A stretch of DNA of 20,781 nucleotides from Octopus sinensis (lineage: Eukaryota): assembly GCF_006345805.1 (NCBI RefSeq), contig NW_021824083.1, positions 1-20,781 on the forward strand, given 5' to 3'. Below the pieces are notes generated by a model. The model made no database searches. It was not told the origin of the DNA and saw only the letters and a program-made list of their open reading frames with translations. A program made the translations under genes and the position numbers. How positions within the stretch are numbered: position 1 is the stretch's first letter; each line of letters begins with the position of its first letter. This document shows, piece by piece, positions 1-20,781 of the stretch.

Positions 1-28
1 ATATATATATAATATATATATATATATT

Positions 29-63
<35 letters not shown>

Positions 64-91
64 ATTTATATATATTATATATATATATACT

Positions 92-139
<48 letters not shown>

Positions 140-168
140 TTATTTATTTATATATATAATATATATAT
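1..168. repeat. (TA)n microsatellite
   Basis: Near-pure TA dinucleotide run read directly from the sequence. Confidence 0.98.
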
Positions 169-1174: not shown

Positions 1175-1724
1175 AGGCGGCGAGCTGGCAGAAACGTTAG
1201 CACGCCGAGCGAAATGCGTAACCGTATTTCATCTGCCGTTACGTTCTGAGTTCATATTCCGCCGAGGTCGACTTTGCCTTTCATCCTTTCGGGGTCGATA
1301 AATTAAGTACCAGTTACGCACTGGGGTTGATATAATCAACTTAATACGTTTGTCTGTCCTTGTTTGTCCCCTCTGTGTTTAGCCCCTTGTGGGTAGTAAA
1401 GAAATAGGTATTTCGTCTGCCGTTACATTCTGAGTTCATATTCCGCCGAGATCGACTTTGCCTTTCATCCTTTCGGGGTCGATAATATAAGTACCAGTTA
1501 CGCACTGGGGTCGATGTGATCGACTTAATCCGTTTGTCTGTCCTTGTTTGCCCCCTCTATGTTTAACTCCTTGTGAGCAATAAAGAAATAAGAAACGTTT
1601 GCACGCCGGGCGGAATGCTTAGCGGTATTTCTTCTGCCGTTATGTTCTGAGTTCAAATTCCGTTTGTCGGTCCTTGTTTGTCCCCTCTGTGTTTAGCCCT
1701 TTGTGGGCAGTAAAACAAAAAAAA
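1175..1724 (+). mobile_element. SINE family A head-to-tail trimer (1175-1408, 1409-1590, internally deleted 1591-1724)
   Basis: Head aggcggcgagctggcagaaacgttag, B box gagttca(t/a)attcc, and tail ...gtgggtagtaaagaaata repeated. A 16-bp TSD with 2 mismatches (aattcatctcgaactg 1159-1174 / aattgatctcgaaccg 1725-1740) brackets the whole trimer. Confidence 0.9.
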
Positions 1725-2240: not shown

Positions 2241-3975
2241 CTTTCTTTATTACCCACTAGGGGCGACACAGAGGGGGACACCAAAAGACATGGGGACATA
2301 GAACATTATAATTAAAATTTATGAAAATGAATTGTTAAATGATAAAATGAAAGCGATACCAACGGCCCCATCCGTCAGCATCACTTACCTGTCCTTTGTT
2401 TTTCATAGTCACTTGAATGTTCTTTGCCAATACGAATAAATTCCATATCCATTCTTACTCCGAAATACTCATCCATATTTTCCACGAATTCATCGCTCAT
2501 TCTTATATCTTTCACCTCCCAATTCTCCCTTTCACACCTCACCATAAACTCATCTATGTTCTTCTTTTCAATCACAGCATACCTAGTCTCACCAACATCA
2601 TACCATTTATACTCTTCCATTAGACTTTTAACTTCTTTCTGTTCAGTCATAGTACAAATGTACGGCCTGATATCGATTTCAATCTCTTGTCTGTGTGTAT
2701 TCTTTTTTTTCTTTTGTTTTCTTGTTGGGGGGGAGCGGGTGGGTTCAATGTCTGCATGGATAGGGTGGGACTCAGAGGGCGTGGGTGGTTTTGGGGTGGA
2801 TTGGAGTTCCATATTATTTTCTTTTCCACGTATTCTTCTCTTCCTCTTATTTCCAGCTTCCTTCCATTTCTGTGTATTCTCTTCCTCTTCTACTGTCTCC
2901 TTCTCCTCTGGTTTCTGCTTCTCTCTCTGTGGTTCGGAATCATTTCTTTCCCTGGGGGAGGGCAGAAGGCTCTTATGTGACCCCTCAGGCCACACTTGTA
3001 ACAACGTGGAGCCCTGCCCTCCACCCACACTCTCATGATCACGTCTCCCAATCTGATGCTTTCCGCCAGGTCTACCAGTACCTCGGTCTCTGCCTGTACG
3101 TTCAGCTCCACTGTTACGCCTCTCCAGCCCTCGGACTTAACCGAGGCATGGAGAATATCCACTTCGTCCTCGTGGCCGCTGATCACAGCCGCCACAATCC
3201 ATTCTGCCTCCACGTGGTGGGCACTCCCTCCACCATTATTCGTGTAATCCTCCTGTTTAAATACGTAGGTAACAGTGTTACCTTTTTGACTTCACCGCCT
3301 TCGCCGCCATCTCCTCGCTGCAGATTCACTTTTAAAATGTACCACTACGGTTCCGTACTTGGATCCTCGAGTCAGAAAATTAATTTCCTCCTCAGTTCTT
3401 CGCAGGGCTTCCTCTATCCACTGCATGGTTACAACTTCTACCCTCTTCCTTTCGTTTGCGAACACCCTGTAAATAATGGTCCTCCTATCATACCATTCCT
3501 TTTCCTGGGTGTCGGGGCCAGTTCCACCTCACCGCTTTCCATTTTCATGTATTTCTGGTAACTTGGCAACTTGGCCAAGTCGACCCCTTTCTCTTCCGCC
3601 TTCTTGGTTACACCGGCATAGGTATAACTCAGCTTCTCTTCCAATTTCCTTGCTGCCATTTCTAGCTCCTTCTCAGACGTAGACAAGTCTGATAAAGACT
3701 CGAAAACTCCAGGCTTTTCTTCCATCAGCTTCATTGTAATTGCCTGTTCCAGTTCCTCATCTGTCGTGGACAAGTCTGTTAGAGACTCATAGTCCATTTC
3801 CTTCTGTCTGACAGACCGAAAACGGCCGCCAAAACAGAAAAAGTGTAACGCGCTGAACGAGCGAAACGCGAAACCGCGTCAACGCCGTTCAGAATTTCCA
3901 CAACAACAACAACGCTTTTTCTTCTTTTTTACCGAATTTTCAGCAGCCGAAAAAAACACAACCGACCAACCCTTT
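2241..3975 (-). mobile_element. ORF1(gag)-only non-LTR retro-element (HAL1-like, non-autonomous)
   Basis: CpG-rich 5' leader (3798-about 3975, 5' boundary approximate), one frameshifted gag-like ORF, about 90 nt of 3' UTR, then a tail (2241-2290) matching the SINE A tail including aataaa. No RT or endonuclease ORF, and no clear TSD. Confidence 0.7.
2381..3797 (-). pseudogene. Retrotransposon ORF1/gag-like nucleic-acid-binding protein, about 470 aa after repairing 4-5 single-base frameshifts
   Basis: ORFs 3438-3797, 2890-3213 and 2381-3028 join through intervening frames (EWYDRRTIIYRVF...KYGTVVVHFKSESAAR...VTLLPTYLNRRITRIMVEGVP). The CX2CX4HX4C knuckle CYKCGLRGHIRAFC lies at 2962-3003, followed by a charged low-complexity linker. 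Confidence 0.8.
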
Positions 3976-5616: not shown

Positions 5617-6218
5617 AAGGCGGCGAACTGGCAGAAACGTTAACACGCCGGGCGAAATGCATAGCAGTATTTTGTCTGCCGTTACGTTCTGAGTTCAAAT
5701 TCCACCGAAGTTGACTTTGCCTTTCATCCTTTCGAGGTCGATTAAATAAGTACCAGTTACAAACTGTGGTTGATATAATTGACTTAATCTGTTTCTCTGT
5801 CATTGTTTGTCCTCTCTGTGTTTAGCCCCTTGGGGGTAGTAAAGAAATAGGTATTTCGTCTGCCGTTACGTTCTGAGTTCAAATTCCGCCGAGGTCGACT
5901 TTACCTGTCATCCTTTCGGGGTCGATTAAATAAGTACCAGTTACACACTGGGGTCGATATAATTGACTTAATCTGTTTCTCTGTCATTGTTTGTCCTCTC
6001 TGTGTTTAGCCCCTTGTGGGTAGTAAAAAAATAGGTATTTCGTCAGCCGTTACGTTCTGAGTTCAAATTCCGCCGAGGTCGACTTTGCCTTTCATCCTTT
6101 CGGGGTCGATAAATTAAGTATCAGTTACGCACTGGGGTCGATATAGTCGACTTAATCCTTTGTCAGTCCTTGTTTGTCTCCTCTGTGTTTAGCCCCTTGT
6201 GGGTAGTAAAGAAATAGG
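5617..6218 (+). mobile_element. SINE family A trimer (5617-5851, 5852-6035, 6036-6218)
   Basis: One head, then ~184-bp units joined at aaatagg|tatttc. Only a weak possible TSD (agtggtggata 5607-5617 / agcggtagata 6222-6232). Confidence 0.92.
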
Positions 6219-6629
6219 TGCAGCGGTAGATATTTCGCTGTTTTCTACAATTAAAAAAAAAACCTTGTTTTGCGTAAATCTACCTTGAGGTCATTCATTT
6301 GGATTCCTGTTGCCATCGAGCGGTGCACGGGTGGCTTTAGAAAATACAACTTTAGGAAGCAGGATGTTATCATCAAGCAATTACAGTGTGGAAATTTAGG
6401 TGGAAACTCTGAGACAATGACTGTTTCAGATCTTACATTCAGATTTATTACCTAAACATGTGTGACAAACAGCGATGTTTAGGTCACCATAAGGTTTAAG
6501 TAATCTTTAGAAATGTCGTCCAATTTAGTAGAAGATTCTTGTAGATACGTTCCTACATTAATCTCGGGACAATGGAAAATAATACAAATTCACGTTTCTG
6601 TTCCTTTGGATTTCTATTACAGGCTTACT

Positions 6630-9341: not shown

Positions 9342-9376
<35 letters not shown>

Positions 9377-9747
9377 GCTGCTGATGATGATGGTGATGAT
9401 GATGATGCCGCCGCCGCTGCTAACACTGCCACCAGCACTAGCACCACCACCACCACCACCATCATCACTACTGCTACCACCACCAACACCACCATTACTA
9501 CTACTACTACTGATGATGATGATGATGATGCCGCCGCTACTAACATCGCCACCAGCACCACCAGCAGCACCACCACCACCATCACTACTGCTACCACCAC
9601 CACCATTACTACTACTACTACTACTACTATACTACTACTACTACTGATGAAGATGATGATGATGATGATGCCGCCGCAACTACTGACGCCGCCACCAGCA
9701 CCACCATCACTACTATTACCACCACCACCACTACTACTACTGCTACA

Positions 9748-9781
<34 letters not shown>

Positions 9782-10119: not shown

Positions 10120-10728
10120 AAGGCGGCGAGCTGGCAGAAACGTTAGCGCGCCGGGAGAAATGCTTAGCGGTATTTCGCCTCTCGTTACGTTGTGAGTTCA
10201 AATTCCGCCGAGGTCGACTTTGCCTTTCATCCTTTCGGGGTCGATTAAATAAGTACCAGTTACGCACTGGGGTCGATGTAATCGACTTAATACCTATGTC
10301 TGTCCTTGTTTGTTCCCTCTGTGTTTAGCCCCTTGTGGGTAATAAAGAAATAGGTATTTCGCCTGTCGTTACGTTCTGAGTTTGAGTTCAAATTCCGCCG
10401 AGGTCGACTTTGCCGTTCATTCCTCACAGGGTCGATAAATTAAGTACCAGTTACACACTGGGGTCGATGTAACCGACTTAATCCCTTTGTCTGTCCTTGT
10501 TTGTCCCCTCTATACTTAGCCGCTTGTGGGTAGTAAAGAAATAGGTATTTCGCCTGTCGTTACGTTCTGAGTTCAAATTCCGCCGAGGTCGACTTTGCCT
10601 TTCATCCCTCACAGGGTCGATAAATAAAATACCAGTTACGCACTGGGGTCGATGTAACCGACTTAATCCCTTTGTCTGTCCTTGTTTGTCCCCTCTATGC
10701 TTAACCCCTTGTGGGCAGTAAAGAAATA
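10120..10728 (+). mobile_element. SINE family A trimer (10120-10354, 10355-10545, 10546-10728)
   Basis: An 18-bp TSD with 1 mismatch (tatacacgttttgcaagt 10102-10119 / tatacacgttttgtaagt 10729-10746) brackets the whole trimer. Confidence 0.93.
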
Positions 10729-13140: not shown

Positions 13141-13501
13141 AATGAATGAAAAGAATGAAAGAAATGAAAAGAATGAATGAAAAAATAATAATAATAATAA
13201 TAATATCAATAATAATAATAATAAAAATAATAAAAATAATAATAATAAAAAAAAATAATAATAATAATAATAATAATAATATTAATAGTAATAATATTAA
13301 TAATAATAATATCAATAATAATAATAATAATATTAATAATAATAATATTAATAATAATAATATTAATAATAATAATAATGATAATAATAAAAATATCAAT
13401 AATAATAATAATAATATTAATAATAATAATATCAATAATAATAATAATAATAATATTAATAATAATAATATTATAATAATAATGATAATAATAATAATGA
13501 T

Positions 13502-13532
<31 letters not shown>

Positions 13533-13550
13533 TCAATAATAATAATAATA
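13141..13550. repeat. Long degenerate (AAT)n microsatellite (about 410 bp)
   Basis: Seen directly; the poly-I/N/L ORFs are artefacts. Confidence 0.97.
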
Positions 13551-13707
13551 ATGACTGAATTTATTGACATGGTCAATAGAGAGCCGCTACCAAAGCATTC
13601 AAACAGCACAACAAAATAACAACACTATCATGATGTATAATGTTGCTCTTAGACAGATCTTCAGAAATAAGGGAAATGACCTAACAACTTTAAATAACCT
13701 CATCTAG
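13551..13707 (+). pseudogene. Decayed R4/Dong-like N-terminal fragment (second subfamily)
   Basis: MTEFIDMVNREPLPKHSNSTTK / NTIMMYNVALRQIFRNKGNDLTTLNNLI* parallels the LP.L...N..L..I....LT.LN.LI motif. Confidence 0.4.
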
Positions 13708-14070: not shown

Positions 14071-14578
14071 TGTGGGGGCAAAAGTAGGTATACCTTAAAT
14101 ATCGCATCAATACTATAAAGTTTAATTGATTATAATTATTAGCTCATTAAATTAGCCTCATTTATTATATTTTCAGTGTCATTAATCACAATAATACATT
14201 TATCATAACTATAATGATACTTTTATCGCAACTTTTAATATTTTTCATAAAATGGTATTAGTATTCTCTTTATTTTGTTTCTTCCATAACTACATACCTA
14301 CATTTGCCACACCTTGTGTGTGTCTGTGCATATATATATATATATATATATTAGTCAATTTAGGGTAGCAAAAAAATTCAATAGAAATTTATCGCTACCA
14401 GCGGCCTGGTGGAAAAGAGGAAAATAGTCATCGACTAAATATATAAATATAACAATTTAGGAGTGACCCTAACAGGTCATTCGTCCACCAGAAAGAGCAG
14501 CCATAACTCACACACAACTCACCGCCAAGTAGTAGTAATTCAGAATTAGGTGAATTTAAAAACATTTACCCTAATTCA

Positions 14579-14680
14579 TCTTTTAGACGTTGCAACGTTT
14601 CTGTGTCATTAATGATTAAATTAGCTTAATTAAATTAAATTAAGCTAATCTACCATAGGTTACACTTCATCAGTAAAAAA
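14579..14680 (-). ncRNA. Type I hammerhead-like ribozyme motif, unit 1
   Basis: Reverse complement of the motif described for 19324-19425; intact. Confidence 0.7.
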
Positions 14681-15050
14681 CCTGGGAGAGACAAATATAC
14701 ACGAGGCGTCTGTATCGATGCCTACGGAATATCTGTCTTAAAATTTTCAAGACTGACGTATTCGCGCCAAACTTATCAGCAGTAAATATAAACTGCCGAT
14801 TCAATCTCAGAATTATTCAGAAAATTATCAATTAGTCAATTTAGGTAGCAAAAAAATTCAATAGAAATTTATCGCTACCAGCGGCCTGGTGGAAAAGAGA
14901 AAATAGTCATCGACTAAATATATAAATATAACAATTTAGGAGTGACCCTAACAGGTCATTCGTCCACCAAAAGAGCAGCCATAACTCACACCGCCAAGTA
15001 GTAGTAATTCAGAAATTAGGTGAAAATTTAAAAAACATTACCCTAATTCA

Positions 15051-15152
15051 TCTTTTAGACGTTGCAACGTTTCTGTGTCATTAATGATTAAATTAGCTTA
15101 ATTAAATTAAATTAAGCTAATCTACCATAGGTTACACTTCATCAGTAAAAAA
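15051..15152 (-). ncRNA. Type I hammerhead-like ribozyme motif, unit 2
   Basis: Same motif; intact. Confidence 0.7.
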
Positions 15153-15520
15153 CCTGGGAGAGACAACATATACACGAGGCGTCTGTATCGATGCCTACGG
15201 AATATCTGTCTTAAAATTTTCAAGACTGACGTATTCGCGCCAAACTTATCAGCAGTAATATAAACTGCCGATTCAATCTCAGAATTATTCAGAAAATTAT
15301 CAATTAGTCAATTTAGGGTAGCAAAAAAATTCAATAGAAATTTATCGTACCAGCGGCCTGTGGAAAAGAGAAAATAGTCATCGACTAATATATAAATATA
15401 ACAATTTAGGAGTGACCCTAACAGGTCATTCGTCCACCAGAAAGAGCACCATAACTCACACCGCCAAGTAGTAGTAATTCAGAAATTAGGTGAAAATTTA
15501 AAAAACATTACCCTAATTCA

Positions 15521-15625
15521 TCTTTTAGAACGTTGCAACGTTTCTGTGTCATTAATGATTAAATTAGCTTAATTAAATTAAATTAGGAGCTAATCTACCA
15601 TAGGTTACACTTCATCAGTAAAAAA
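15521..15625 (-). ncRNA. Type I hammerhead-like motif, unit 3 (indels near the cleavage site and in stem II)
   Basis: Extra A (ttttagaacg) and a gga-type insertion in the stem II hairpin; may be sequencing error. Confidence 0.5.
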
Positions 15626-15995
15626 CCTGGGAGAGACAAATATACACGAGGCGTCTGTATCGATGCTACGGAATATCTGTCTTAAAATTTTCAAGACTGA
15701 CGTATTCGCGCCAAACTTATCAGCAGTAAATATAAACTGCCGATTCAATCTCAGAATTATTCAGAAAATTATCAATTAGTCAATTTAGGGTAGCAAAAAA
15801 ATTCAATAGAAATTTATCGCTACCAGCGGCCTGGTGGAAAAGAGAAAATAGTCATCGACTAAATAATAAATATAACAATTTAGGAGTGACCCTAACAGGT
15901 CATTCGTCCACCAGAAAGAGCAGCATAACTCCACCGCCAAGTAGTAATTCAGAAATTAGGTGTGAAAAATTTAAAACATTTACCTACCCAATTCA

Positions 15996-16099
15996 TCTTT
16001 TAGAGACGTTGCAACGTTTCTGTGTCATTAATGATTAAATTAGCTTAATTAAATTAAATTAAGCTAATCTACCATAGGTTACACTTCATCAGTAAAAAA
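15996..16099 (-). ncRNA. Type I hammerhead-like motif, unit 4 (2-nt insertion at stem I)
   Basis: ttttagagacg variant; core otherwise intact. Confidence 0.55.
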
Positions 16100-16471
16100 C
16101 CTGGGAGAGACAAATATACACGAGGCGTCTGTATCGATGCCTACGGAATATCTGTCTTAAAATTTTCAAGACTGACGTATTCGCGCCAAACTTATCAGCA
16201 GTAAATATAAACTGCCGATTCAATCTCAGAATTATTCAGAAAATTATCAATTAGTCAATTTAGGGTAGCAAAAAAATTCAATAGAAATTTATCGCTACCA
16301 GCGGCCTGGTGGAAAAGAGAAAATAGTCATCGACTAAATATATAAAATAACAATTTAGGAGTGACCCTAACAGGTCATTCGTCCACCAGAAAGAGCAGCC
16401 ATAACTCACACACCGCCAGTAGTAGTAATTCAGAAATTAGGTGAAAATTTAAAAACATTTACCCTAATTCA

Positions 16472-16572
16472 TCTTTTAGACGTTGCAACGTTTCTGTGTC
16501 ATTAATGATTAAATTAGCTTAATTAATTAAATTAAGCTAATCTACCATAGGTTACACTTCATCAGTAAAAAA
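16472..16572 (-). ncRNA. Type I hammerhead-like ribozyme motif, unit 5
   Basis: Core intact; 1-nt deletion in the stem II hairpin loop. Confidence 0.7.
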
Positions 16573-16938
16573 CCTGGGAGAGACAAATATACACGAGGCG
16601 TCTGTATCGATGCCTACGGAATATCTGTCTTAAAATTTTCAAGACTGACGTATCCGCGCCAAACTTATCAGCAGTAAAATATAACTGCGTTCAATCTCAG
16701 AATTATTCAGAAAATTATCAATTAGTCAATTTAGGGTAGCAAAAAAATTCAATAGAAATTTATCGCTACCAGGCCTGGTGAAAAGAGAAAATAGTCATCG
16801 ACTAAATATATAAATATAACAATTTAGGAGTGACCCTAACAGGTCATCGTCCACCAGAAAGAGCAGCCATAACTCACACCGCCAAGTAGTAGTAATTCAG
16901 AAATTAGGTGAAAATTTAAAAACATTTACCCTAATTCA

Positions 16939-17040
16939 TCTTTTAGACGTTGCAACGTTTCTGTGTCATTAATGATTAAATTAGCTTAATTAAATTAAAT
17001 TAAGCTAATCTACCATAGGTTACACTTCATCAGTAAAAAA
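16939..17040 (-). ncRNA. Type I hammerhead-like ribozyme motif, unit 6
   Basis: Same motif; intact. Confidence 0.7.
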
Positions 17041-17412
17041 CCTGGGAGAGACAAATATACACGAGGCGTCTGTATCGATGCCTACGGAATATCTGTCTTA
17101 AAATTTTCAAGACTGACGTATTCGCGCCAAACTTATCAGCAGTAAATATAAACTGCCGATTCAATCTCAGAATTATTCAGAAAATTATCAATTAGTCAAT
17201 TTAGGGTAGCAAAAAAATTCAATAGAAATTTATCGCTACCAGCGGCCTGGTGGAAAAGAGAAAATAGTCATCGACTAAATATATAAATATAACAATTTAG
17301 GAGTGACCCTAACAGGTCATTCGTCCACCAGAAAGAGCAGCCATAACTCACACCGCCAAGTAGTAGTAATTCAGAAATTAGGTGAAAATTTAAAAACATT
17401 TACCCTAATTCA

Positions 17413-17514
17413 TCTTTTAGACGTTGCAACGTTTCTGTGTCATTAATGATTAAATTAGCTTAATTAAATTAAATTAAGCTAATCTACCATAGGTTACACT
17501 TCATCAGTAAAAAA
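17413..17514 (-). ncRNA. Type I hammerhead-like ribozyme motif, unit 7
   Basis: Same motif; intact. Confidence 0.7.
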
Positions 17515-17885
17515 CCTGGGAGAGACAAATATACACGAGGCGTCTGTATCGATGCCTACGGAATATCTGTCTTAAAATTTTCAAGACTGACGTATTCGCG
17601 CCAAACTTATCAGCAGTAAATATAAACTGCCGATTCAATCTCAGAATTATTCAGAAAATTATCAATTAGTCAATTTAGGGTAGCAAAAAAATTCAATAGA
17701 AATTTATCGCTACCAGCGGCCTGGTGGAAAAGAGAAAATAGTCATCGACTAAATATATAAATATAACAATTAGGAGTGACCCTAACAGGTCATTCGTCCA
17801 CCAGAAAGAGCAGCCATAACTCACACCGCCAAGTAGTAGTAATTCAGAAATTAGGTGAAAATTTAAAAACATTTACCCTAATTCA

Positions 17886-17987
17886 TCTTTTAGACGTTGC
17901 AACGTTTCTGTGTCATTAATGATTAAATTAGCTTAATTAAATTAAATTAAGCTAATCTACCATAGGTTACACTTCATCAGTAAAAAA
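17886..17987 (-). ncRNA. Type I hammerhead-like ribozyme motif, unit 8
   Basis: Same motif; intact. Confidence 0.7.
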
Positions 17988-18380
17988 CCTGGGAGAGACA
18001 AATATACACGAGGCGTCTGTATCGATGCCTACGGAATATCTGTCTTAAAATTTTCAAGACTGACGTATTCGCGCCAAACTTATCAGCAGTAAATATAAAC
18101 TGCCGATTCAATCTCAGAATTATTCAGAAAATTATCAATTAGTCAATTTAGGGTAGCAAAAAAATTCAATAGAAATTTATCGCTACCAGCGATAAATTTC
18201 TATTGAATTTTTGCTACCCTAAATTGACTAATTGATAATTTTCTGAATAATTCTGAGATTGAATCGGCAGTTTATATTACTGCTGATAGTTTGGCGCGAA
18301 TACGTCAGTCTTGAAAATTTTAAGACAGATATTCCGTAGGCATCGATACAGACGCCTCGTGTATATTTGTCTCTCCCAGG

Positions 18381-18482
18381 TTTTTTACTGATGAAGTGTA
18401 ACCTATGGTAGATTAGCTTAATTTAATTTAATTAAGCTAATTTAATCATTAATGACACAGAAACGTTGCAACGTCGAAAAGA
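18381..18482 (+). ncRNA. Type I hammerhead-like motif, right arm copy 1
   Basis: CTGATGA at 18388-18394 and GTC at 18473-18475; T>G at 18476 breaks the first stem I pair. Confidence 0.6.
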
Positions 18483-18852
18483 TGAATTAGGGTAAATGTT
18501 TTTAAATTTTCACCTAATTCTGAATTACTACTACTTGGCGGTGTGAGTTATGGCTGCTCTTTCTGGTGGACGAATGACCTGTTAGGGTCACTCCTAAATT
18601 GTTATATTTATTATTTAGTCGATGACTATTTTCTCTTTTCCACCAGGCCGCTGGTAGCGATAAATTTCTATTGAATTTTTTTGCTACCCTAAATTGACTA
18701 ATTGATAATTTTCTGAATAATTCTGAGATTGAATCGGCAGTTTATATTTACTGCTGATAAGTTTGGCGCGAATACGTCAGTCTTGAAAATTTTAAGACAG
18801 ATATTCCGTAGGCATCGATACAGACGCCTCGTGTATATTTGTCTCTCCCAGG

Positions 18853-18954
18853 TTTTTCACTGATGAAGTGTAACCTATGGTAGATTAGCTTAATTTAATT
18901 TAATTAAGCTAATTTAATCATTAATGACACAGAAACGTTGCAACGTCTAAAAGA
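18853..18954 (+). ncRNA. Type I hammerhead-like motif, right arm copy 2
   Basis: CTGATGA at 18860-18866 and GTC at 18945-18947; T>C at 18858 in stem I. Confidence 0.6.
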
Positions 18955-19323
18955 TGAATTAGGGTAAATGTTTTTAAATTTTCACCTAATTTCTGAATTA
19001 CTACTACTTGGCGGTGTGAGTTATGGCTGCTCTTTCTGGTGGACGATGACTGTTAGGGTCACTCCTAAATTGTTATATTTATATATTTAGTCGATGACTA
19101 TTTTCTCTTTTCCACCAGGCCGCTGGTAGCGATAAATTTCTATTGAATTTTTTGCTACCCTAAATGGACTAATTGATAATTTTCTGAATAATTCTGAGAT
19201 TGAATCGGCAGTTTATATTACTGCTGATAAGTTTGGCGCGAATACGTCAGTCTTGAAATTTTTTAAGACAGATATTCCGTAGGCATCGATACAGACGCCT
19301 CGTGTATATTTGTCTCTCCCAGG

Positions 19324-19425
19324 TTTTTTACTGATGAAGTGTAACCTATGGTAGATTAGCTTAATTTAATTTAATTAAGCTAATTTAATCATTAATGACA
19401 CAGAAACGTTGCAACGTCTAAAAGA
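19324..19425 (+). ncRNA. Type I hammerhead-like ribozyme motif, right arm copy 3 (reference copy)
   Basis: Stem I tttttta (19324-19330)/taaaaga (19419-19425); CTGATGA at 19331-19337; stem II GTGT...ACAC; GAAA at 19403-19406; stem III ACGT-TGCA-ACGT; predicted cleavage after GTC at 19418. Confidence 0.75.
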
Positions 19426-19796
19426 TGAATTAGGGTAATGTTTTTAAATTTTCACCTAATTTCTGAATTACTACTACTTGGCGGTGTGAGTTATGGCTGC
19501 TCTTTCTGGTGGACGAATGACCTGTTAGGGTCACTCCTAAATTGTTATATTTATATATTTAGTCGATGACTATTTTCTCTTTTCCACCAGGCCGCTGGTA
19601 GCGATAAATTTCTATTGAATTTTTTTGCTACCCTAAATTGACTAATTGATAATTTTCTGAATAATTCTGAGATTGAATCGGCAGTTTATATTTACTGCTG
19701 ATAAGTTTGGCGCGAATACGTCAGTCTTGAAAATTTTAAGACAGATATTCCGTAGGCATCGATACAGACGCCTCGTGTATATTTGTCTCTCCCAGG

Positions 19797-19897
19797 TTTT
19801 TTACTGATGAAGTGTAACCTATGGTAGATTAGCTTAATTTAATTTAATTAAGCTAATTAATCATTAATGACACAGAAACGTTGCAACGTCTAAAAGA
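19797..19897 (+). ncRNA. Type I hammerhead-like ribozyme motif, right arm copy 4
   Basis: CTGATGA at 19804-19810, GTC at 19888-19890, stem I intact. Confidence 0.72.
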
Positions 19898-20527
19898 TGA
19901 ATTAGGGTAAATGTTTTTAAATTTTCACCTAATTTCTGAATTACTACTACTTGGCGTGTGAGTTATGGCTGCTCTTTCTGGTGACGAATGACCTGTTAGG
20001 GTCACTCCTAAATTGTTATATATATATATATATTTAGATTTATATTACCAGGTTTCTTCATGTATGTGTGTCTATTTATATATTTATTTATTTATTTATT
20101 CATTCATTTATATTACCTGAACATCCAAACTTCCTCATTCTACATTGAGAGAAAGACGGGATGGACGCTTCATTTTTGTGCTGGTGCCGCATTATGTCCT
20201 ACGCGACTGTGAGGATTTGCATCCCCAACATAGAATTTATGATGTAATACATGTCCTTGAAGTAGTAATTGTGCGCGGCTGAAGAAGGCCATAGACACAC
20301 ATTATGCATTGTTATAAATCCGTCTAATAAAGGCCCGAAACATATGTACCACTGAATCTTTGGCATCATGTTTTTATTTTGATTAATATACTCTACCACC
20401 TACACCACCAAATGGTATATACAGATGCTTACAATTATCAAGTATTCACCCTATGTATATATATATAGGTGAGAGAGTTTGTGTTTGAAAGCACGTGGTT
20501 GGATGTATAAAAAATAAAAAAAGAGAA

Positions 20528-20781
20528 AAAAAAACTACAGAAGGCTTCTGTTATAAGGTTAAAAATGAATGCCTCCCTCTGCCTGGAACTCAATATTTCA
20601 CAACATAGCGAAGACATGACACGATGTAGGTAAAGAAACTTGAGAAATTTGAAAAGAAAATACGAAACTGGTTATTTCTCCGAAAATTATCTTACTATAC
20701 ACAAAATTTTCTAACATTTTTCTAACATAGCGACTTAAATATATTATTTAACCTATAACACAAGCCTTCTGTAGTTTTTTT
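20528..20781. mobile_element. MITE-like element with ~35-bp imperfect terminal inverted repeats (reaches the window edge)
   Basis: aaaaaaactacagaaggcttctgttataaggttaaa (20528-20563) versus tttaacctataacacaagccttctgtagttttttt (20747-20781). No ORF inside. Confidence 0.6.

What the first reader, a model, noticed from the sequence alone, without database searches (positions are those of the whole stretch)
14351..20021. Tandem ~472-nt repeat in which every unit encodes a type I hammerhead ribozyme: a candidate cephalopod retrozyme / self-cleaving satellite
Seen in the sequence: each unit has, on one strand, tttttta-CTGATGA-a-GTGT...ACAC-a-GAAAC-GTTGCAAC-GTC^taaaaga (e.g. 19324-19425). This gives both conserved hammerhead core boxes, a canonical GUC triplet, a 7-bp stem I (6 Watson-Crick + 1 G.U) and a stem III formed by the perfect palindrome ACGTTGCAACGT. 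There are 12 such motifs (8 minus, 4 plus), and the predicted plus-strand cuts at 18475, 18947, 19418 and 19890 are 471-472 nt apart. Established knowledge: tandem repeats carrying type I hammerheads are known as newt satellite 2, schistosome Sm-alpha, cricket pDo500 and metazoan non-LTR retrozymes; these yield monomeric, often circular, RNAs and are thought to use Penelope-like machinery. Inference: this array is such an element, with a fairly long monomer, in a probable octopus. I cannot tell whether the family is already described.
Basis: partly seen in the sequence, partly recalled or inferred. Interest (0 to 1): 0.95.

Follow-up and report, generated by a model that had tools for sequence, protein, structure and literature searches.

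The report
Octopus tandem repeat carrying hammerhead ribozymes
A 5.7-kb block of twelve near-identical ~474-base repeats in an Octopus genome carries one hammerhead self-cleaving RNA motif per repeat, so it looks like a cephalopod example of the already known "retrozyme" class of small mobile elements; cleavage itself has not been tested.

Summary
A ~474-nt tandem repeat spans 14352 to about 20022-20036, with 8.1 units whose motif lies on the minus strand and 3.9 units on the plus strand. Every unit has CUGAUGA...GAAA...GUC with type I topology. Eight of the 12 motifs are fully intact, and four have stem I or cleavage-site defects. The host is an Octopus.

The motif is not a canonical hammerhead. 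An extra A sits on each side of helix II, helix II carries a ~55-nt hairpin extension, and helix III is a 12-nt perfect palindrome. No Rfam hammerhead model matches, even at E<=10.

Three features match the hammerheads described for Penelope-like elements (PLEs): the extra base after A9, the G10.1-C11.1 pair and the palindromic helix III. Folding a two-unit transcript predicts a composite inter-unit hammerhead.

The two arms meet head-to-head at 5'-truncated ends. The left end abuts (TA)n, which fits PLE-style integration. Copies differ by only ~0.1% in substitutions.

Best reading: a young, non-autonomous, PLE-dependent non-LTR retrozyme, a new member of a known kind. Catalysis, circular RNA and mobilisation are inferred, because no homologues could be retrieved. 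Interest is moderate (0.4), not 0.95.

The parts
14331..14351 (.). (TA)n microsatellite directly abutting the left outer end of the array
   Evidence: Sequence read. Only (TA)n is shared between the two flanks.
14352..18189 (-). Left arm: 8.1 units of the ~474-nt repeat with the hammerhead sense on the minus strand. Its RNA-sense 5' end is at the junction (consensus position ~176) and its 3' end is at 14352 (...GACTAAT, consensus position ~229).
18176..18197 (.). Head-to-head inversion junction: atttatcg / loop ctaccag (18183-18189) / cgataaat, with a 2-nt CG microhomology at 18190-18191. Both arms are 5'-truncated at almost the same unit position (176 vs 184-185).
   Evidence: The sub-threshold miRNA-like Rfam hits here are only this palindrome.
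18190..20022 (+). Right arm: 3.9 units with the hammerhead sense on the plus strand. Its 3' end lies inside the unit's own TA-rich tract, so the boundary is ambiguous between 20022 and 20036.
20023..20034 (.). (TA)n at the right outer end. It is either target microsatellite or an expansion of the unit's own TTATATAT tract.
14578..14681 (-). Hammerhead motif, intact. C17 at 14586; predicted cut between 14586 and 14585 on the minus strand.
15050..15153 (-). Hammerhead motif, intact. C17 at 15058.
15521..15626 (-). Hammerhead motif, defective. It reads GUU instead of GUC with a 1-nt insertion that shifts stem I, and has a 2-nt insertion in the helix II extension.
15997..16100 (-). Hammerhead motif, defective. 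A TC insertion directly after C17 (16005) disrupts stem I.
16471..16573 (-). Hammerhead motif, intact. C17 at 16479.
16938..17041 (-). Hammerhead motif, intact. C17 at 16946.
17412..17515 (-). Hammerhead motif, intact. C17 at 17420.
17885..17988 (-). Hammerhead motif, intact. C17 at 17893.
18380..18483 (+). Hammerhead motif with U1.1>G (an A.G mismatch next to the cleavage site). C17 at 18475.
18852..18955 (+). Hammerhead motif with U2.2>C (a C.A mismatch in stem I). C17 at 18947.
19323..19426 (+). Hammerhead motif, intact. Layout: stem I 5' strand 19323-19330; CUGAUGA 19331-19337; extra A 19338; helix II GUGU...ACAC with a 55-nt hairpin extension; extra A; GAAA; helix III ACGU-UGCA-ACGU; C17 at 19418; stem I 3' strand 19419-19426.
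19796..19898 (+). Hammerhead motif, intact. C17 at 19890.

Best explanation
The block is a young, non-autonomous retroelement of the metazoan 'non-LTR retrozyme' kind in an Octopus genome, carrying a Penelope-like-element (PLE) type of type I hammerhead.

Shown by the sequence:
- Twelve ~474-nt units, each with CUGAUGA, helix II, GAAA, helix III and GUC, with stem I open.
- A 12-nt perfect palindrome as helix III.
- An extra A after A9 followed by a G10.1-C11.1 pair.
- 34% GC, no coding capacity, and a strongly self-paired monomer on the hammerhead strand.
- Two arms joined 5'-end to 5'-end, and (TA)n at the left outer end.

Inferred mechanism:
1. The array is transcribed into multimeric RNA.
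2. The palindromic helix III strands of neighbouring units pair with each other, forming composite (double) hammerheads.
3. [quoted passage not shown]
4. A host RtcB-type ligase circularises the monomers.
5. A PLE reverse transcriptase, primed at a (TA)n site nicked by its GIY-YIG endonuclease, copies the circular or multimeric RNA more than once around and so produces a tandem array.
6. A second priming or template-switch event gives the inverted, 5'-truncated arm.
For: - Motif and periodicity.
- Chance rate of a hammerhead descriptor is about 7e-5 per unit. A relaxed descriptor finds nothing else in the other 15 kb of the window.
- The hammerhead fold of a 128-nt segment is only 1.2 kcal/mol above its MFE (-28.4 vs -29.6). 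Two copies co-fold into a double hammerhead at -72.9 vs 2 x -29.6.
- The unconstrained MFE of a 613-nt two-unit transcript contains the 12-bp inter-copy helix III plus a trans stem I, with the core unpaired. It is 16 kcal/mol better than two monomeric hammerheads.
- Circular monomer MFE is -130 against -93+/-5.6 for shuffles (z=-6.6), and the antisense strand reaches only -106. The monomer is 64% paired with 34% GC.
- PLE-hammerhead hallmarks are listed in PMC4209133: an unpaired base between A9 and 10.1, a conserved G10.1-C11.1, an enlarged helix II, and a palindromic helix III.
- The retrozyme definition and size range come from PMC7229834 and the 2026 preprint.
- PLE insertion traits ((TA)n bias, inverted 5'-truncated copies) come from PMC8557442.
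- O. vulgaris has 31 recently active PLE families (PMC13282606), and the host is Octopus.
- Only 6 substitutions occur in 5690 nt, including between the inverted arms, as expected if both arms came from one recent template.
Against: - No Rfam hammerhead model matches, even at E<=10 on 141 nt.
- The A between C11.1 and G12 is not among the variants described in the papers read. Together with the A after A9 it puts an A.A step between the core and the most conserved helix II pair, which could lower or abolish activity.
- PLE-type hammerheads cleave poorly in vitro.
- Four of the 12 copies have stem I or cleavage-site defects.
- No homologue from any other locus or species could be retrieved, so there is no covariation evidence.
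- The copies are too similar for a conservation test: 4.7 events expected in the core, 2 observed, P=0.15.
- The right-hand (TA)n may be the unit's own TA tract.
- The inversion junction also fits a DNA-level fold-back or an assembly error.
- No PLE ORF lies in the window.
Confidence: 0.7

Rival explanations
1. A hammerhead-derived but now catalytically dead satellite. The repeat descends from a PLE pseudo-LTR or a retrozyme, but the A.A-flanked core no longer cleaves. The array grew by unequal crossing-over, and the inversion arose by a replication fold-back, with no RNA intermediate.
For: - Rfam is negative.
- An extra A lies on both sides of helix II.
- Four of 12 copies are damaged at stem I or the cut site.
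- The junction is a plain hairpin with a 7-nt loop and 2-nt microhomology, as seen in DNA fold-back inversions.
- The right-flank (TA)n is ambiguous.
Against: - All 12 copies keep CUGAUGA, GAAA, helix II and helix III intact.
- Substitution divergence of ~0.1%, including between inverted arms, points to a very recent event.
- The composite hammerhead is the predicted MFE of a two-unit transcript.
- The hammerhead strand folds much better than the antisense strand.
Confidence: 0.2
2. An ordinary satellite in which a hammerhead-like string arose by chance.
For: The descriptor hits about 7.5e-8 per base in random sequence. A 2.8-Gb genome would therefore hold hundreds of chance motifs, and no homologues were available to test conservation.
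Against: - The chance per 474-nt unit is about 7e-5.
- The real motif exceeds the descriptor: an 8-bp stem I and a 12-nt palindromic helix III.
- It shows the PLE-specific extra base plus G10.1-C11.1.
- Tandem context, low GC and a structured monomer all match the known class.
Confidence: 0.03
3. The array is the pseudo-LTR part of an autonomous Penelope-like element whose ORF lies outside the window or has been deleted, rather than a separate non-autonomous family.
For: - PLE hammerheads sit in pseudo-LTRs, and PLEs form tandem and inverted insertions.
- Retrozymes are phylogenetically nested among pseudo-LTRs.
Against: - Twelve consecutive ORF-less units lie between unique flanks.
- No RT or GIY-YIG ORF occurs anywhere in the 20.8-kb window.
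- Translations of the unit hit nothing among 5.8 billion proteins, which include the O. vulgaris annotation.
Confidence: 0.07
4. The head-to-head arrangement is a long-read or assembly fold-back artefact, and the true locus is a single one-orientation array. This concerns only the inversion, not the repeat or the motif.
For: - The junction is an exact hairpin.
- Copy differences are 54 indels against 6 substitutions, typical of an unpolished long-read consensus.
Against: - The arms are not exact mirror images: 5 mismatches plus 28 gap positions at zero shift, against 7 plus 38 when shifted by one unit.
- The arms differ in length.
- Both outer ends run into different unique sequence.
Confidence: 0.1

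Closest known systems
Metazoan non-LTR retrozymes (Cervera & de la Pena 2020, PMC7229834), e.g. the ~350-390-bp Mytilus galloprovincialis repeats, Acropora 220-240-bp repeats and axolotl 330/350-nt repeats
   Same: - Tandem non-coding repeats of a few hundred bp with one type I hammerhead per unit.
- Low GC (34% here).
- A highly self-paired monomer.
- A host genome that also carries PLEs.
- At least 2 consecutive complete motifs, the operational criterion of the 2026 preprint.
   Different: - No expression, circularity or cleavage data here.
- Helix II carries a ~55-nt hairpin extension, so there is no helix II-capping loop in the position of loop 2 of canonical type I motifs.
- An extra A lies on both sides of helix II.
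- Helix III is a 12-nt palindrome.
- The array is two head-to-head arms rather than one direct array.
- No cephalopod example was found in the papers searched.
PLE-type (minimal or atypical) type I hammerheads in pseudo-LTRs of Penelope-like elements (Cervera & de la Pena 2014, PMC4209133; Lunse et al. 2017, cited in PMC6765202)
   Same: - An unpaired base between A9 and G10.1, and a conserved G10.1-C11.1.
- An enlarged helix II and a palindromic helix III.
- A predicted need to act as inter-copy dimers in tandem arrangements.
   Different: - Here helix III is a full 4-bp stem plus a 4-nt loop, not 0-2 bp.
- Stem I is long (7-8 bp) rather than 4-5 bp.
- A second extra base lies 3' of helix II.
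- No RT/GIY-YIG ORF lies between the copies.
Newt satellite 2, Schistosoma Sm-alpha and cave-cricket pDo500 self-cleaving satellites (as summarised in PMC7229834 and PMC6765202)
   Same: Tandem or dispersed repeats that encode type I hammerheads. The newt and other amphibian motifs have a weak helix III and cleave as dimers.
   Different: By my own knowledge, not tested here, those motifs have a canonical core with a short capped helix II. This one matches none of the curated Rfam hammerhead models.
L1 twin-priming inversions and PLE 'inverted 5'-truncated copy' insertions (PLE structure from PMC8557442; the L1 mechanism from my own knowledge)
   Same: - Two arms with RNA-sense 5' ends meeting at an internal junction with microhomology.
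- 3' ends facing the target DNA.
- A (TA)n target like that preferred by Neptune and Naiad PLEs.
   Different: - Both arms are multimeric copies of a short unit.
- The two 5' ends fall at nearly the same unit position (176 vs 184-185), which also fits a snap-back copy.
- A target-site duplication cannot be read in a microsatellite.

Membership tests
Hammerhead ribozyme, type I | Conserved core C3-U4-G5-A6-N7-G8-A9 and G12-A13-A14, an A15.1-U16.1 pair, and H17 not G | tested here: met
   CUGAUGA, GAAA, A15.1-U16.1 and C17 are present in 11 copies, and U17 in one.
Hammerhead ribozyme, type I | Three helices around the core, with helix I open and helices II and III closed | tested here: met
   Stem I has 7-8 bp, helix II has 4 bp plus a hairpin extension, and helix III has 4 bp plus a UGCA loop. 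The constrained fold is -28.4 against an MFE of -29.6 kcal/mol.
Hammerhead ribozyme, type I | G10.1-C11.1 pair stacked directly on A9/G12 | tested here: not met
   One A lies between A9 and G10.1, and one A lies between C11.1 and G12. The 5' extra base is known in PLE and some other hammerheads. The 3' one was not found in the papers read.
Hammerhead ribozyme, type I | Match to the curated covariance models (Rfam hammerhead families) | tested here: not met
   No hammerhead family appears at the gathering threshold or at E<=10, on 20.8 kb, 5.8 kb or 141 nt.
Hammerhead ribozyme, type I | Site-specific self-cleavage 3' of position 17 | not testable with these tools
   This needs in vitro transcription or in vivo end mapping.
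Hammerhead ribozyme, type I | Helices supported by compensatory changes among homologues | not testable with these tools
   No homologue was retrievable, and the copies in the array differ by only 6 substitutions.
Metazoan non-LTR retrozyme | Tandem repeats of roughly 50-1000 bp, each with a type I hammerhead, and at least 2 consecutive complete motifs | tested here: met
   Twelve units of ~474 nt, with runs of up to four consecutive intact motifs (16479-17893).
Metazoan non-LTR retrozyme | Low GC (<45-50%) and no LTR, PBS, PPT or coding region | tested here: met
   GC is 34%. The longest ORF in the array is 59 aa, and no protein homologue exists. PBS and PPT were not searched for specifically.
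Metazoan non-LTR retrozyme | Monomer RNA predicted to be stable and highly self-paired | tested here: met
   Circular MFE is -130 kcal/mol with z=-6.6, and 64% of bases are paired.
Metazoan non-LTR retrozyme | Accumulates as monomeric linear and circular RNA in tissues | not testable with these tools
   No transcriptome search by nucleotide sequence was available.
Metazoan non-LTR retrozyme | Co-occurs with autonomous PLEs in the same genome | not tested
   Literature only: O. vulgaris has 31 recently active PLE families and 336 insertions (PMC13282606). None lies in this window.
PLE-type hammerhead | Unpaired base between A9 and 10.1, conserved G10.1-C11.1, enlarged helix II, and palindromic 15.2-16.2 positions and loop 3 | tested here: met
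   The motif reads CUGAUGA-A-GUGU...ACAC, helix II has a 55-nt extension, and ACGUUGCAACGU is a perfect 12-nt palindrome. The features are listed.
PLE-type hammerhead | Located in pseudo-LTRs flanking an RT plus GIY-YIG ORF | tested here: not met
   No such ORF lies in the window. The units follow each other directly.
PLE-mediated insertion | Insertion into a (TA)n microsatellite, with tandem and inverted 5'-truncated copies | tested here: inconclusive
   The left end abuts (TA)10, and the arms are head-to-head and 5'-truncated. The right-hand (TA)n may be the unit's own tract, and no empty site was available.

The most novel reading that the evidence does not exclude
The locus is a near-pristine record of a single retrozyme integration event. 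A circular or multimeric hammerhead RNA was copied by a PLE reverse transcriptase primed on a (TA)n target through TA microhomology, and twin priming or snap-back gave the two head-to-head arms. If so, it would be direct sequence evidence for which machinery mobilises metazoan retrozymes and how the tandem arrays are born. It would also mean that a hammerhead with an A.A step inserted between the core and helix II, and a 55-nt helix II extension, is catalytically competent as an inter-unit dimer.
Probability: 0.3. Interest if true: 0.6.

Novelty: new member of a known kind. Interest (0 to 1): 0.4.

Why it matters
Hammerhead-bearing tandem repeats (non-LTR retrozymes) are abundant sources of small circular RNA in corals, mussels and amphibians. 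According to the 2020 review, their sequences give no clue to the autonomous element that mobilises them. A 2026 preprint argues from sequence relatedness that they derive from PLE pseudo-LTRs.

This Octopus array would extend the class to cephalopods, for which I found no description in the papers searched. The array is very young and both of its ends and an internal inversion junction are preserved. It therefore offers a concrete locus for testing PLE-type target-primed integration at (TA)n.

It also offers a natural core variant for testing how much the hammerhead tolerates next to helix II. If the motif does not cleave, the locus is simply one more decayed PLE-derived satellite.

Tried and rejected
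- Rfam cmscan at the gathering threshold on the whole window, at E<=10 on 5.8 kb and at E<=10 on 141 nt gave no hammerhead family. The only hits were sub-threshold hairpin and miRNA-like matches caused by the inversion palindrome and the AT-rich helix II.
- Exact-pattern scans for the motif gave nothing useful. Metagenome contigs gave 0 hits with both the long and the short helix II spacing, and viral contigs gave 0. Prokaryotic genome contigs gave 1 hit in a bacterial MAG. It lies in GC-rich sequence with no stem I, and my estimate is about 0.4 chance hits for this pattern in a collection of that size.
- I tried to reach Octopus DNA or RNA assemblies through ORFs of the unit. Seven exact ORF look-ups were not in the collection, and a 290-aa concatenated translation scored no hit.
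- One O. vulgaris locus (L002) fetched through a window ORF homologue contains neither the unit nor any hammerhead motif. I stopped this random sampling as too inefficient.
- A conservation test of the core against the rest of the unit within the array has no power: 2 events against 4.7 expected, P=0.15, and almost all events are indels.
- The mirror-image test of the two arms was not decisive.
- A search for further copies or a target-site duplication in the window found only (TA)n and low-complexity matches.
- I considered and rejected a foldback-transposon reading. There is no unique centre, the arms are unequal, and a hammerhead sits in every unit.
- I also rejected a miRNA-precursor reading of the junction or of helix II, since all such scores are far below the gathering thresholds.
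- I ran no further search on a guessed PLE query, because Octopus hits would probably be buried among PLEs from other animals.

Full report
**1. The observation**

Tandem Repeats Finder reports two adjoining arrays of one repeat. The first spans 14350-18191 (period 473, 8.1 copies, 97% matches) and the second spans 18188-20029 (period 472, 3.9 copies, 97%).

The pattern CTGATGA-N55-80-GAAACGTTGCAACGTC occurs 11 times, 7 on the minus strand and 4 on the plus strand. It occurs 0 times in 100 dinucleotide-preserving shuffles. A twelfth copy reads GTT in place of GTC.

The predicted C17 positions are 18475, 18947, 19418 and 19890 on the plus strand. On the minus strand they are 14586, 15058, 15529, 16005, 16479, 16946, 17420 and 17893. 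Spacings run from 467 to 476 nt, and the consensus unit is 474 nt.

**2. Is it more than chance?**

I wrote a general type I hammerhead descriptor. It requires CUGANGA, an optional 1-nt bulge on either side of helix II, helix II of at least 4 bp and up to 120 nt, and GAAA. It also requires helix III of at least 4 bp starting with A15.1-U16.1, H17 not G, and stem I of at least 5 bp.

- In 40 Mb of random sequence with the unit's dinucleotide make-up it hit 3 times.
- That rate is about 7e-5 per 474-nt unit (both strands) and about 3e-3 per window.
- It would still give hundreds of hits in a 2.8-Gb genome, so the motif alone is not significant genome-wide.
- The argument rests on the context: one motif per unit of a tandem repeat, and details not required by the descriptor (section 3).
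- A more relaxed descriptor finds only the eight intact copies in the window and nothing in the remaining 15 kb.

**3. Anatomy of the motif**

On the sense strand, for example 19323-19426, the motif reads as follows:
- stem I 5' strand GUUUUUUA;
- CUGAUGA;
- an extra A;
- GUGU, then a 55-nt segment that folds into a near-perfect AT-rich hairpin, then ACAC;
- a second extra A;
- GAAA;
- CGU-UGCA-ACG-U;
- C17, followed by the predicted cut;
- stem I 3' strand UAAAAGAU.

Three features depart from the canonical motif.

First, helix II is 4 bp followed by an internal loop and a long hairpin, not a short capped stem.

Second, one A lies between A9 and G10.1 and another lies between C11.1 and G12. 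An A.A step therefore separates the core from the helix II pair that Perreault et al. call the most conserved pair apart from A15.1-U16.1.

Third, helix III plus its loop is a perfect 12-nt palindrome.

Probably because of the first two features, no Rfam hammerhead family matches at the gathering threshold. None matches at E<=10 on 5.8 kb or at E<=10 on 141 nt alone.

Cervera and de la Pena (2014, PMC4209133) describe the hammerheads of Penelope-like elements as having:
- an unpaired base between positions 9 and 10.1;
- a conserved G10.1-C11.1 pair;
- an enlarged helix II;
- a palindromic helix III or loop 3;
- probable action as dimers.

They also note that such variants escaped standard descriptors. 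The Octopus motif has all four sequence features. The extra A on the 3' side of helix II is not among the variants described in the papers I read, and its effect on catalysis is unknown.

**4. Folding**

- A 128-nt segment can adopt the hammerhead fold at -28.4 kcal/mol, against an MFE of -29.6.
- Two copies co-fold into a double hammerhead, with a 12-bp inter-molecular helix III and trans stems I. Its energy is -72.9 against 2 x -29.6.
- In a 613-nt transcript spanning two consecutive motifs, the unconstrained MFE (-175.9) already contains the inter-copy helix III. It also pairs the upstream copy's stem I 5' strand with the downstream copy's 3' strand and leaves the upstream core unpaired.
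- Forcing two separate monomeric hammerheads in that transcript costs 16 kcal/mol.
- The thermodynamic prediction is therefore that cleavage, if it occurs, uses composite inter-unit hammerheads in multimeric transcripts. The literature proposes this for amphibian and PLE motifs.
- The circular monomer is strongly structured: -130 kcal/mol against -93+/-5.6 for shuffles (z=-6.6), with 64% of bases paired.
- The antisense strand reaches only -106 kcal/mol. No hammerhead motif exists on the antisense strand.

**5. State of the copies**

- Eight motifs are fully intact.
- Four carry defects confined to stem I or the cut site: 15529 (GUU with a 1-nt shift), 16005 (TC inserted after C17), 18475 (U1.1>G) and 18947 (U2.2>C).
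- CUGAUGA, GAAA, proximal helix II and helix III are identical in all 12 copies.
- This says little, because the 60 differences from the consensus are 41 deletions, 13 insertions and only 6 substitutions in 5690 nt.
- Such a profile looks like long-read consensus error. The true substitution divergence is about 0.1%.
- A core-versus-rest test has no power (2 events observed, 4.7 expected, P=0.15).
- The array is therefore very young or recently homogenised, and this includes the comparison between the two inverted arms.

**6. Architecture of the locus**

- In RNA-sense orientation both arms start at the junction, at consensus positions ~176 and ~184-185 counted from the cut site, and run outward.
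- They are therefore joined head-to-head, and both are 5'-truncated at almost the same place.
- The junction is a hairpin, atttatcg-ctaccag-cgataaat, with a 2-nt CG microhomology at 18190-18191.
- The left arm's 3' end (...GACTAAT) abuts (AT)10 at 14331-14351.
- The right arm's 3' end lies in the unit's own TA-rich tract (...TTGTTATAT) and is followed by (AT)6-7 and TTTAG. The right boundary is therefore ambiguous between 20022 and 20036, and the right-hand (TA)n may be unit-derived.
- No target-site duplication can be read, and the flanks share only (TA)n.
- Craig et al. (PMC8557442) report three traits for PLEs. These are an insertion bias for (TA)n microsatellites that hides target-site duplications, complex tandem and inverted insertions, and an inverted 5'-truncated copy next to the element.
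- The Octopus locus fits that pattern. It is what twin priming, or a snap-back by a reverse transcriptase on a multimeric or circular template, would give.
- It also fits a DNA-level fold-back, or a read or assembly artefact in principle.
- Against a trivial artefact, the arms are not exact mirror copies and both outer ends continue into different unique sequence.

**7. Host and partners**

- A 215-aa ORF elsewhere in the window (2381-3028, minus strand) hits only Octopus vulgaris proteins, at 65-98% identity.
- The surrounding 1.7 kb is ~95% identical to a tandem macrosatellite on O. vulgaris chromosome record OX597827.1.
- The window therefore comes from O. vulgaris or a close relative.
- A 2026 repeat annotation of O. 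vulgaris lists 31 recently active Penelope-like families with 336 insertions, and does not mention ribozymes (PMC13282606).
- The window itself contains no RT or GIY-YIG ORF.
- Translations of the unit match nothing among 5.8 billion proteins.

**8. Comparison with what is known**

Metazoan non-LTR retrozymes are defined as tandem, low-GC, non-coding repeats carrying type I hammerheads. They are expressed as small, highly self-paired circular RNAs and co-occur with PLEs (PMC7229834 and PMC7761336).

A 2026 preprint finds consensus lengths of 51-972 bp and relates retrozymes phylogenetically to PLE pseudo-LTRs. Its operational criterion is a TRF array with at least 2 consecutive complete hammerhead motifs.

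The Octopus array meets every sequence-level criterion, and 474 nt is not unusually long. It differs in the helix II extension, the A.A step, the full palindromic helix III and the head-to-head arrangement.

I found no paper in the searchable library that describes a hammerhead repeat or retrozyme in a cephalopod. That is absence from this library only. Repbase, Dfam and subscription papers could not be checked.

**9. Verdict**

- The feature is real. It is best explained as a young, PLE-dependent, retrozyme-type element with a PLE-type hammerhead that probably works as an inter-unit dimer (confidence 0.7).
- The main rival is that it is a dead hammerhead-derived satellite maintained at the DNA level (0.2).
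- Catalysis, circular RNA and mobilisation are inferences.
- It is a new member of a known kind, of moderate interest (0.4). Hammerhead repeats are widespread in metazoans, including molluscs.
- The added value is the cephalopod host, the unusual core variant, and an unusually fresh insertion architecture that bears on how such arrays are made.
- No comparative test was possible, because none of the available collections holds cephalopod DNA searchable by nucleotide sequence.

Noticed in passing
window 1224-1590, 5667-6219, 10169-10728: A 184-185-nt SINE-like unit occurs as tandem dimers or trimers at three places (87% mean column identity). It contains a tRNA-T-arm-like GAGTTCAAATTCC stretch, but ARAGORN calls no tRNA.
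   Followed up: partly
window 2242-3965; L002 1050-19151: This 1.7-kb stretch is ~95% identical to a 1.74-kb macrosatellite with at least 10 copies on O. vulgaris OX597827.1. That macrosatellite's copies are annotated as 'hypothetical predicted proteins'. The window holds a single unit.
   Followed up: partly
window 2890-3213 (-): An ORF inside that macrosatellite unit contains a CCHC zinc-knuckle-like string (C-YK-C-GLRG-H-IRAF-C), which suggests a gag-derived origin. It has no Pfam hit at E<=0.01.
   Followed up: partly
window 20528-20566 and 20743-20781: There are 39-nt inverted repeats, 87% complementary and 176 nt apart, with the right arm ending at the window edge. This may be a MITE-like element.
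   Followed up: no
window 14352-20022: Differences between repeat copies are 41 deletions, 13 insertions and 6 substitutions. This looks like uncorrected long-read consensus error rather than divergence, so the homopolymer lengths in this window should not be trusted.
   Followed up: yes
window 18102-18268: A sub-threshold Rfam hit to MIR6140 (84 bits, gathering score 140) and other hairpin families is produced purely by the palindrome at the inversion junction.
   Followed up: yes
window 1-168, 9342-9781, 13184-13552: Long simple repeats are present: (AT)86 at the window start, a CCA/ACT-rich block, and (AAT)124 about 800 bp upstream of the hammerhead array.
   Followed up: no
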